DNA of 58,315 bases, filler included, from Bipalium vagum (lineage: Eukaryota), in the NCBI GenBank assembly GCA_037834085.1. It is 3 parts of 3 records of this genome, joined end to end, with 100 filler letters (N's around TTAATTAATTAA, not from the genome) between each part and the next. Parts side by side here need not be neighbours in the genome. Positions count along the whole stretch, not along the records: positions 19,159 to 36,947 come from JBBMKC010051118.1; 2 more parts are not named here. One strand, written 5' to 3'. A program made the translations under genes and the position numbers. The notes beneath the pieces were generated by a model that saw only the letters and a program-made list of their open reading frames with translations, did no database searches and was not told the origin of the DNA. Positions 19,473 through 19,985 of the stretch are shown in pieces (position 1 is the first letter of the stretch; each line of letters begins with the position of its first letter).

Positions 19473-19985
19473 TTGTACCAATTTACATCTCATGGTTGTA
19501 ATAATTTATACATAGAGAGACACAGCGTCATCTCAGAACACGAGCATTCACAACCAAGCAGAACAAGCAAGGTGTTGGATCATTCAGTATACTGCGGTGA
19601 AAGAAAAAGCAAAGTTAAAGAGAACGAATTCAGAATGATTATGGGAAACGTTGATAATAATGATGAAACAAAGATCTGTGAGTCATTATTAATCAAAGAA
19701 AGGCAACCAAATATTAACATCAAGATGGGAGAGAGTAAGAACCAGTGGATCGTTAATGTTTTCTGCGATTAATTTTTTTTTAAAAATATATTTTATCCAA
19801 TAATAATCAAGAAAAATATTTTTTAAATTTTTAGTGATTTAAAATGTAAATATCAAAAACATTGACTGATGAAGAACTGAAAAATAAAAGTTCGAAACAT
19901 GTTTCATGAAAATATATATTTGAATACATTTTTTATTCATTTAATAAAAAGCGTAAATTTAATAAATAATTTTTTATTTTATATT
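19473..19985 (+). mobile_element. Penelope-like retroelement 3' remnant (GIY-YIG endonuclease plus terminal repeat)
   Basis: YQFTSHGCNNLYI...SEH...KICESLLIKERQPNINIK is typical of the PLE GIY-YIG domain. It is homologous to 35147-35443 and is followed by a hammerhead motif. Confidence 0.85.
19860..19908 (+). ncRNA. Minimal type I hammerhead ribozyme (apparently intact)
   Basis: Stem I CAU(U)GA/UCAUG. Core CUGAUGA at 19866-19872 plus one extra A. Stem II GAACU (19874-19878) pairs with AGUUC (19889-19893). GAAA at 19894-19897. Palindromic ACAUGU forms stem III. GUU cleavage triplet at 19901-19903. Confidence 0.8.

What the first reader, a model, noticed from the sequence alone, without database searches (positions are those of the whole stretch)
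19860..19908. Intact minimal hammerhead ribozyme just downstream of a Penelope GIY-YIG ORF
Seen: all catalytic core nucleotides (CUGAUGA...GAAA, GUU), a perfect 5-bp stem II, a bulged 5-bp stem I and a palindromic ACAUGU stem III, about 90 nt after the endonuclease stop on the same strand. Known: PLE terminal repeats encode minimal type I hammerheads that are thought to work as dimers. The four copies in this window keep GAACU/AGUU(C/U) while the loop varies (10, 10, 7 and 6 nt), which supports a structural constraint. The class is known; this family and its dispersal as solo copies may be undescribed.
Basis: partly seen in the sequence, partly recalled or inferred. Interest (0 to 1): 0.75.

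Follow-up and report, generated by a model that had tools for sequence, protein, structure and literature searches.

The report
Penelope retrotransposon tail with hammerhead motif
This is a real but ordinary minimal hammerhead ribozyme motif in the leftover 3' tail of a truncated Penelope-like retrotransposon, a pairing first described in 2014.

Summary
Window 19860-19908 (+) has every hammerhead core nucleotide, a 5-bp helix II closed by G10.1-C11.1, an unpaired A after the CUGAUGA box, a bulged 5-bp stem I, and the palindrome ACAUGU in place of helix III. The predicted cut is after 19903. A full descriptor hits once in the piece and never in 2000 dinucleotide shuffles.

The motif lies 87 nt after the stop of a decayed GIY-YIG reading frame. 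Relatives of that frame are C-terminal domains of reverse-transcriptase proteins: 10 of 10 long hits carry RVT_1. It is therefore the tail of a 5'-truncated Penelope-like element (PLE).

A second truncated copy on the minus strand (34911-34955) has three core changes.

Contigs of other organisms show a high-copy repeat running from about 19463 to about 19950. No common variants fall in 19862-19926.

Rfam models do not detect the motif. Nearest-neighbour energies favour an inactive dimer. Cleavage is untested.

Solo copies from truncated PLEs were already described (PMC4209133). Verdict: new member of a known kind, low interest.

The parts
19371..19772 (+). Remnant of the C-terminal GIY-YIG endonuclease part of a Penelope-like element ORF (copy 1). 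It is 5'-truncated and decayed, with an internal deletion in the GIY-YIG block. Stop TAA at 19770-19772.
   Evidence: ORF 19473-19772. tblastn of RT+EN proteins aligns their last 111-137 residues to 19371-19763; 6 of 7 queries hit this copy and none aligns an RT part. Alignment to copy 2. Pfam gives nothing significant for this copy itself.
19773..19859 (+). AT-rich 3' untranslated spacer of 87 nt between the ORF stop and the hammerhead motif.
   Evidence: Aligns to copy 2 with large indels. Covered by the same repeat-family contigs.
19860..19865 (+). Stem I, 5' strand (CAUUGA, one U bulged).
   Evidence: Most contigs in X1-X3 read G at 19861, which turns A-U into G-U and keeps the pair.
19866..19873 (+). 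Core box C3-A9 (CUGAUGA), followed by the unpaired A typical of PLE min-HHRs.
   Evidence: The feature is named in PMC4209133.
19874..19893 (+). Helix II (GAACU/AGUUC, 5 bp, G10.1-C11.1) with a 10-nt loop.
19894..19903 (+). G12 A13 A14, then A15.1-CAUG-U16.1 (palindrome ACAUGU 19897-19902), then U17. Predicted cut after 19903. The stretch 19894-19905 is a perfect 12-nt palindrome.
   Evidence: The cut site is inferred from the hammerhead numbering and has not been assayed.
19904..19908 (+). Stem I, 3' strand (UCAUG).
19909..19950 (+). Tail of the repeat unit downstream of the motif. The end is approximate.
   Evidence: In run X2 summed contig depth is 198,015 at 19923-19945, 22,618 at 19946-19968 and 990 at 19969-19991.
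35120..35581 (-). Copy 2: 5'-truncated PLE endonuclease remnant with one in-frame stop and one frame break. Final stop at 35122-35120.
   Evidence: tblastn hits for 7 of 7 queries at 35581-35126. Pfam GIY-YIG 16 bits, below the 22.6 cut-off. phmmer finds 1121 relatives at E<=1e-3.
34911..34955 (-). Copy 2 hammerhead-like motif. It has the same helix II and a 6-nt loop, but differs from the core at three invariant positions (position 4, position 12, position 14). It lies 164 nt after the stop.

Best explanation
Window 19371 to about 19950 (+) is the 3' end of a 5'-truncated Penelope-like retrotransposon insertion. It holds the last ~130 codons of the GIY-YIG endonuclease, an 87-nt untranslated spacer, the family's minimal type I hammerhead motif (19860-19908) and a ~45-nt tail.

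The motif has a complete catalytic core but no stable helix III, only A15.1-U16.1 around the palindromic CAUG. A single copy therefore cannot fold into the active shape.

Inferred from published work on this class: in full-length elements arranged in partial tandems, two copies pair through the ACAUGU palindrome into a double hammerhead. Each strand is then cut after GUU (here after 19903), probably slowly and with help from protein.

This copy has lost its RT and promoter and has no partner nearby on the same strand. It is most likely a dead relic whose motif happens to be unmutated. Copy 2 on the minus strand shows the same arrangement with a mutated core.
For: Shown here:
- Motif anatomy.
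- Rarity: 0 hits in 2000 shuffles for the full descriptor; family-specific patterns give 2 matches against 0 in 100 shuffles.
- EN tail on the same strand in two copies, collinear through the spacer to the motif.
- phmmer of the copy-2 EN: 1121 hits at E<=1e-3 and 46 at E<=1e-10.
- All 10 of the 10 long hits tested carry RVT_1 upstream of the matched C-terminal stretch. One of them also passes Pfam GIY-YIG.
- tblastn finds only the EN part in the piece, so both copies are truncated.
- Contigs of runs X1-X3 cover EN through motif. One 544-nt contig of X3 spans 19440-19949.
- In X2, 1246 contigs were laid. Depth rises toward the 3' end and collapses after about 19945-19968.
- No variant reaches a 5% share anywhere in 19862-19926, against 28 variant rows in the 397 nt before it. 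That predicts 4.6 in 65 nt, Poisson P about 0.01, for a window chosen after the fact.
- 19861 A>G keeps the pair.
- Copy 2 differs from copy 1 on both sides of one stem I pair and still pairs (U-A to A-U).
- Monomer helix III is unfavourable, +3.8 kcal/mol with the 1-bp helix III.
- Another locus, L014, has a GIY-YIG about 250 nt upstream of a like motif.

From papers:
- PLE repeats carry min-HHRs with exactly these traits, mostly as single motifs from truncated PLEs, with low activity in vitro and only as dimers (PMC4209133).
- Canonical HHRs are present in all C-terminal EN+ PLE clades (PMC8557442 passages).
Against: - No Rfam hammerhead model matches, even at E<=10 on a 111-base range. This is expected for a motif without helix III, but it means no curated model confirms membership.
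- Nearest-neighbour energies put the double-hammerhead dimer at -9.0 kcal/mol against -25.6 for a dimer in which the whole 12-nt palindrome GAAACAUGUUUC pairs and buries G12-A14 and the cut site.
- Helix II never varies between the two copies or in the laid contigs, so there is no covariation there.
- For the strict 49-nt motif the shortage of variants is not significant (1 row against 3.5 expected, P about 0.14).
- No RNA run holds the stretch and the laid runs are contigs, so nothing is known about transcription or RNA ends.
- No RT, no second repeat and no full-length element lie in the piece.
- For a Poseidon element of Anolis, ribozyme-dead mutants inserted normally in vitro and no RNA-seq reads ended at the cut site (PMC11167929 passages).
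Confidence: 0.85

Rival explanations
1. The conserved block around 19862-19926 is kept because it is an RNA recognition or initiation element for the element's own reverse transcriptase, or some other structural signal. The hammerhead core is then tolerated or parasitic and self-cleavage plays no part in transposition.
For: - The conserved block runs past the motif to about 19926.
- PLE reverse transcription starts internally near the 3' end and leaves a 'tail'. Ribozyme-dead mutants do not change insertion in vitro (PMC11167929 passages).
- Craig et al. note that HHRs may simply parasitise PLEs and that clades without them thrive (PMC8557442 passages).
- The energy model prefers an inactive dimer.
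Against: - Every invariant core position is intact in copy 1, and in the copy-2-like contig ends in X1 and X2, which is hard to explain without selection on the core.
- PAc HHR cleavage was real and core-dependent when protein was added.
- This rival concerns the role of the motif, not its identity.
Confidence: 0.25
2. The motif belongs to a short non-autonomous, retrozyme-like element that merely sits next to PLE debris, or is carried in tandem units of its own.
For: - In X2 depth over the motif (285,000-310,000) is about ten times that over the start of the EN part (19,000-41,000).
- Two go-back joints (19924 to 19804, 19926 to 19881) suggest short head-to-tail units.
- A 2026 preprint argues that animal non-LTR retrozymes derive from PLE repeats (abstract only).
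Against: - EN, spacer and motif are collinear in both window copies and in single contigs of X1 and X3.
- The depth gradient is what 5' truncation gives.
- Each joint rests on one contig of depth 15-18 among 1246.
- There is no tandem repeat around the motif in the window.
Confidence: 0.1
3. The motif is a chance match in AT-rich DNA.
For: The loosest two-box pattern is expected about once in the window. There is no Rfam hit.
Against: - 0 hits in 2000 shuffles for the full descriptor.
- The same motif sits at the same place relative to the EN stop in a second, 70%-identical copy.
- It is conserved in more than a thousand contigs of another organism.
Confidence: 0.01

Closest known systems
Minimal hammerhead motifs (min-HHRs) of metazoan Penelope-like elements (Cervera and de la Pena 2014, PMC4209133)
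   Same: - Type I topology with a full core.
- An extra nucleotide between A9 and G10.1.
- The G10.1-C11.1 pair.
- A short stem I (4-5 bp).
- No stable helix III, with a palindrome at 15.2-16.2.
- Location in the PLE terminal region.
- Most genomic copies are single motifs from truncated elements.
   Different: - Helix II is 5 bp and AU-rich with a 10-nt loop. The Schistosoma families described have 7-8 bp.
- Only the 3' copy is visible here, so placement in both flanking repeats is not shown.
- Activity is not tested.
Drosophila virilis Penelope hammerhead variant and its relatives in flies, rotifers, shrimps and mosquitoes (same paper)
   Same: Helix III consists of the minimal core plus a 2-nt palindromic insertion. 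Here that is A-C-AU-G-U, so dimerisation would give a 6-bp helix III. There is an unpaired base at the 5' end of helix II.
   Different: The D. virilis motif has a bulge inside helix II, a 2-bp helix I and an intron end at helix I. None of these is seen here.
Poseidon element of Anolis carolinensis (PAc) hammerhead (PMC11167929, passages only)
   Same: A PLE-borne hammerhead whose cleavage needs help (protein) in vitro. The element carries a genomic 'tail' beyond the RT initiation site.
   Different: The PAc motif overlaps the ORF start within the repeat. Here the motif is seen 87 nt after the ORF stop, and the family's 5' end is unknown.
Newt, salamander and Schistosoma type I hammerheads and animal non-LTR retrozymes (PMC7229834, passages only)
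   Same: Type I hammerheads with short palindromic helix III that work better as dimers. They sit in AT-rich repeats.
   Different: Those are canonical motifs with loop 1-loop 2 contacts, found in 170-400-bp tandem repeats and expressed as circular RNAs. Here there is no tandem array in the window and no loop-loop contacts are evident.

Membership tests
Hammerhead ribozyme, type I | Core boxes C3 U4 G5 A6 N7 G8 A9 and G12 A13 A14, the A15.1-U16.1 pair, and H17 not G | tested here: met
   CUGAUGA 19866-19872; GAA 19894-19896; A19897 and U19902; U19903. The numbering rule is as given in PMC4209133.
Hammerhead ribozyme, type I | Helices I and II flank the core, with the open end at helix I | tested here: met
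   Helix II is 5 bp. Stem I is 5 bp with one bulged U.
Hammerhead ribozyme, type I | Stable helix III within one molecule | tested here: not met
   Only a 1-bp stem around a 4-nt loop is possible. The monomer with it scores +3.8 kcal/mol. This is the trait that defines the minimal PLE subclass.
Hammerhead ribozyme, type I | Match to curated Rfam hammerhead covariance models | tested here: not met
   There were 0 matches at gathering score, and no hammerhead family among the 3 and 4 matches at E<=10.
Hammerhead ribozyme, type I | Site-specific self-cleavage | not testable with these tools
   No RNA runs hold the stretch, and contigs cannot show RNA ends.
PLE minimal hammerhead (Cervera and de la Pena 2014) | [quoted passage not shown] | tested here: met
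   A19873 in copy 1 and U34942 in copy 2. The same trait appears in 42 of 103 metagenome hits and 0 of 40 prokaryote hits.
PLE minimal hammerhead (Cervera and de la Pena 2014) | G10.1-C11.1 closing pair | tested here: met
   G19874-C19893.
PLE minimal hammerhead (Cervera and de la Pena 2014) | Palindromic 15.2-16.2 stretch and loop 3 | tested here: met
   ACAUGU at 19897-19902 is its own reverse complement.
PLE minimal hammerhead (Cervera and de la Pena 2014) | Consensus family within a genome with covariation in the stems | tested here: inconclusive
   The family is high-copy in run X2 (1246 contigs). I saw only one one-sided change (19861 A>G, giving G-U) and one two-sided change between the two window copies. 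Helix II is invariant.
Penelope-like element, C-terminal EN+ | Single ORF with RT followed by a C-terminal GIY-YIG endonuclease carrying CCHH | tested here: inconclusive
   - The window holds only the EN tail.
- Its Pfam GIY-YIG score is below the cut-off (16 against 22.6 bits).
- Its homologues are RT proteins with the match at the C-terminus, 10 of 10, and one of them passes GIY-YIG.
- C-x2-C and two His are visible in copy 2.
Penelope-like element, C-terminal EN+ | Flanking direct repeats (pLTRs), each with the hammerhead | tested here: not met
   No direct repeat of the motif region lies in the piece. Both copies are 5'-truncated, so the test cannot be met by these copies.
Animal non-LTR retrozyme | Tandem 170-400-bp repeats each carrying a type I hammerhead | tested here: not met
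   There is no tandem repeat at the motif in the window. The only hint is two single-contig go-back joints in X2.

The most novel reading that the evidence does not exclude
In relatives of this genome, the hammerhead-bearing tail (roughly 19804-19926) may be amplified on its own as short head-to-tail units. It would then be a retrozyme-like non-autonomous derivative riding on the Penelope machinery. That would give an invertebrate example of the proposed descent of animal non-LTR retrozymes from PLE terminal repeats.
Probability: 0.1. Interest if true: 0.45.

Novelty: new member of a known kind. Interest (0 to 1): 0.2.

Why it matters
It matters little beyond annotation. The locus is a clean example of the known link between Penelope-like retrotransposons and minimal dimer-dependent hammerheads, in a very AT-rich (26% GC) genome.

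It does show that the motif block is the best-kept part of the family's tail, and that the family is very abundant in at least one other organism. It also marks a sequence type that Rfam models miss.

The open question is what the PLE hammerhead is for. This one truncated copy does not make that more testable.

Tried and rejected
- **Rfam.** Gathering and E<=10 scans of the piece, plus a 111-base scan, gave no hammerhead family. I take this as the models' blindness to motifs without helix III, not as evidence against the motif.
- **Class-level link to the endonuclease.** I looked for it in public contigs. Of 104 loci fetched with the core pattern, only 1 (L014) has a relative of the window's endonuclease anywhere in its flank, by tblastn and by a profile HMM. 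Of the 104 sites, 88 had at least 400 nt upstream. This data set therefore does not show the PLE link for the class.
- **Helix II in those loci.** It is real in 45 of 103 metagenome hits, against 3 of 40 prokaryote hits and about 5 of 104 after shuffling.
- **Stem I in those loci.** In the canonical register it is present in only 4 of 103, which I could not explain.
- **Family-specific pattern.** It gave 0 hits in prokaryote genome contigs and 0 in viral contigs.
- **Covariance model.** I considered building one from the metagenome hits and dropped it. They were retrieved with the window's own 19 core letters, so a hit on the window would be circular.
- **RNA evidence.** None was available: no listed run is RNA and all four laid runs are contigs.
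- **Lunse, Weinberg and Breaker, RNA Biol.** The paper is not held. I know it only from a reference list and from a review's description.
- **Supplements.** Supplementary figures and files of PMC4209133 and PMC8557442, which list the HHR families, were closed. This family may already be listed there.
- **Source organism.** I did not determine it. The only hint is that the neighbouring LicD ORF's nearest Atlas cluster is mostly cnidarian.
- **PLE clade.** The clade (Penelope/Poseidon, Neptune or Nematis) was not assigned. The CCHH residues argue against the Hydra clade, which lacks them.

Full report
**What is there**

On the plus strand, 19860-19908 reads:
- CAUUGA (stem I, 5' strand)
- CUGAUGA (core C3-A9)
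- A (unpaired)
- GAACU, then the loop GAAAAAUAAA, then AGUUC (a perfect 5-bp helix II closed by G10.1-C11.1)
- GAAA
- CAUGU
- U (position 17)
- UCAUG (stem I, 3' strand; 5 bp with one bulged U)

ACAUGU (19897-19902) is a palindrome, and so is the whole GAAACAUGUUUC (19894-19905).

**Is it more than chance?**

- The two core boxes alone are not rare. CTGANGA N8-36 GAAA is expected 1.07 times in the window, and 72 of 100 shuffles have at least one match.
- The exact CTGATGA...GAAAC is expected 0.04 times.
- I wrote a full descriptor with these terms: stem I of at least 4 bp with at most one bulge, CUGANGA, 0-1 free nucleotide, a G-C-closed helix II of at least 4 bp, GAAA, a palindromic helix III stand-in, and H17. 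It hits once in the 17,789-base piece, at 19866, and never in 2000 dinucleotide-preserving shuffles.
- Family-specific patterns find a second copy on the minus strand, with 0 matches in 100 shuffles.

**The surroundings**

- ORF 19473-19772 (+) and ORF 35147-35443 (-) encode related GIY-YIG-like tails. They form a 254-nt, 70% inverted repeat.
- Pfam gives only a sub-threshold GIY-YIG match for copy 2 (16 bits against a cut-off of 22.6) and nothing for copy 1.
- A phmmer search of the 106-residue copy-2 piece against 1.84 billion representatives gave 1121 hits at E<=1e-3 and 46 at E<=1e-10.
- I scanned 10 of the longer hits. All 10 carry RVT_1 upstream of the matched stretch, which lies at their C-terminus. 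One also passes Pfam GIY-YIG.
- tblastn of 7 such proteins on the piece aligns only their last 111-155 residues. They hit 35581-35126 (7 of 7) and 19371-19763 (6 of 7). No RT part aligns.
- Both insertions are therefore 5'-truncated tails of a C-terminal-EN Penelope-like element.
- Copy 2 shows C-x2-C and two His in the expected places. The Hydra clade lacks CCHH (PMC8557442 section 11), so this is not that clade. I did not assign the clade further.

**The second copy**

At 34955-34911 (-), 164 nt after its stop, copy 2 has the same helix II (GAACU/AGUUC), a 6-nt loop, the same palindrome and U17. It reads CCGAUGA and AACA where the core needs CUGAUGA and GAAA. That is three changes at invariant positions, so it is not an intact ribozyme motif.

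One stem I pair differs on both sides between the copies and still pairs (U-A in copy 1, A-U in copy 2). Helix II shows no change at all.

**Other genomes**

No public run holds more than 28% of the sampled words, and none is on record as RNA. I laid the contigs of four runs on 19440-20100 at 80% likeness.
- Run X2 gave 1246 contigs.
- Summed depth starts at 19463, rises toward the 3' end (19,000-41,000 at 19463-19531; 285,000-310,000 at 19877-19922), and collapses after about 19945-19968.
- This is the profile of a high-copy, mostly 5'-truncated retroelement whose unit ends about 45 nt past the cut site.
- One 544-nt contig of X3 spans 19440-19949, so the endonuclease tail and the motif are contiguous elsewhere too.
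- Between 19463 and 19859 there are 28 positions with a variant at 5% share or more in X2.
- In 19862-19926 there are none. That compares with 4.6 expected, Poisson P about 0.01, but I chose the window after seeing the data.
- For the strict 49-nt motif there is one variant (19861 A>G, which keeps the pair as G-U) against 3.5 expected, P about 0.14.
- Loose ends at 19884 show a copy-2-like subfamily with a different loop length. Its 5' core box is intact in X1 and X2, so copy 2's change in that box looks private to it.

**The class in public contigs**

| Feature | Metagenome hits | Prokaryote hits | Shuffled-spacer control |
|---|---|---|---|
| Helix II of at least 4 bp | 45 of 103 | 3 of 40 | about 5 of 104 |
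| Free nucleotide plus G10.1-C11.1 architecture | 42 of 103 | 0 of 40 | not computed |

The window's helix II architecture is therefore that of a real, widespread class.

Two results go against a tidy picture:
- Only 4 of 103 metagenome hits have a stem I of at least 4 bp in the canonical register.
- Only 1 of 104 loci (L014) has a relative of the window's endonuclease in its flank.

**Folding**

- A single molecule cannot hold helix III. The fold scores +3.8 kcal/mol with the 1-bp helix III, -2.5 with stems I and II alone, and -6.0 at the unrelated minimum.
- The double-hammerhead dimer scores -9.0 kcal/mol.
- The predicted minimum for two strands is -25.6 kcal/mol. It pairs the whole 12-nt palindrome and so buries G12-A14 and the cut site.
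- The energy model ignores tertiary contacts, but this fits the low in vitro activity reported for the class.

**Comparison with what is known**

- Cervera and de la Pena (PMC4209133; I read parts 1 and 2 of 4) describe min-HHRs in the terminal repeats of metazoan PLEs with exactly these traits.
- They note that most genomic motifs are single, probably from truncated PLEs.
- They describe variants in flies, rotifers, shrimps and mosquitoes with a small palindromic helix III, like the AU insert here.
- They found no cleavage as monomers and weak cleavage as dimers.
- Craig et al. (PMC8557442; passages and section 11) state that canonical HHRs are present in all PLEs except Naiad and most Chlamys, and that their role is unclear.
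- Frangieh et al. (PMC11167929; passages) found that a Poseidon HHR cleaves only with protein present, that dead-core mutants insert normally in vitro, and that no RNA-seq reads end at the cut site.
- A review (PMC6765202; passages) summarises the dimer model and cites Lunse et al., which I could not read.

**Verdict**

The thing is a new member of a known kind. This copy is most likely a dead relic with an unmutated motif. In the master element the motif probably acts as a dimer-dependent self-cleaver, but that step is inferred from the literature and not shown here. Its role in transposition is an open question in the field.

Rfam does not detect it. No RNA evidence exists in the data I could reach. 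The supplements that might already list this family were closed.

Noticed in passing
window 22530-23381 (+): An intron-less 283-aa ORF of the LicD family (Pfam PF04991, E 1.9e-13). Its nearest Atlas cluster is mostly cnidarian, and a cluster mostly of Nucleocytoviricota members ranks third.
   Followed up: partly
window 29870-30533 (-): Remnants of a Tc1/mariner-type transposase split over two ORF pieces. HTH_Tnp_Tc3_2 scores E 5.2e-10, and DDE_3 is weak and below its cut-off.
   Followed up: no
window 33271-33341 and 36872-36947: Long (TAA)n and (ATT)n microsatellites that form near-perfect inverted repeats of each other. The second runs to the edge of the piece.
   Followed up: no
window 19159-19413 (-): An open reading frame on the minus strand that runs off the piece's edge and abuts the 5' end of the truncated PLE copy. 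No family search was done on it.
   Followed up: no
loci L002-L104 (metagenome contigs): A large family reads ...GUAAAC CUGAUGA U GGCC...GGCC GAAACAUGUUUC AUUAAC. Helix II is clear, but there is no stem I in the canonical register. Its 5' strand would pair instead with GUUU of the palindrome. Only 1 of 104 loci has a GIY-YIG like the window's nearby.
   Followed up: partly
window 19804-19926, as seen in run X2: Two go-back joints (19924 to 19804 with 10 extra letters; 19926 to 19881 with 4) rest on single contigs of depth 15-18. They suggest rare short head-to-tail units that carry the motif.
   Followed up: no
window 19894-19905: The core GAA, the palindrome and U17-U1.1-C1.2 together make a perfect 12-nt palindrome. 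Its duplex is predicted to out-compete the active dimer fold, -25.6 against -9.0 kcal/mol.
   Followed up: partly
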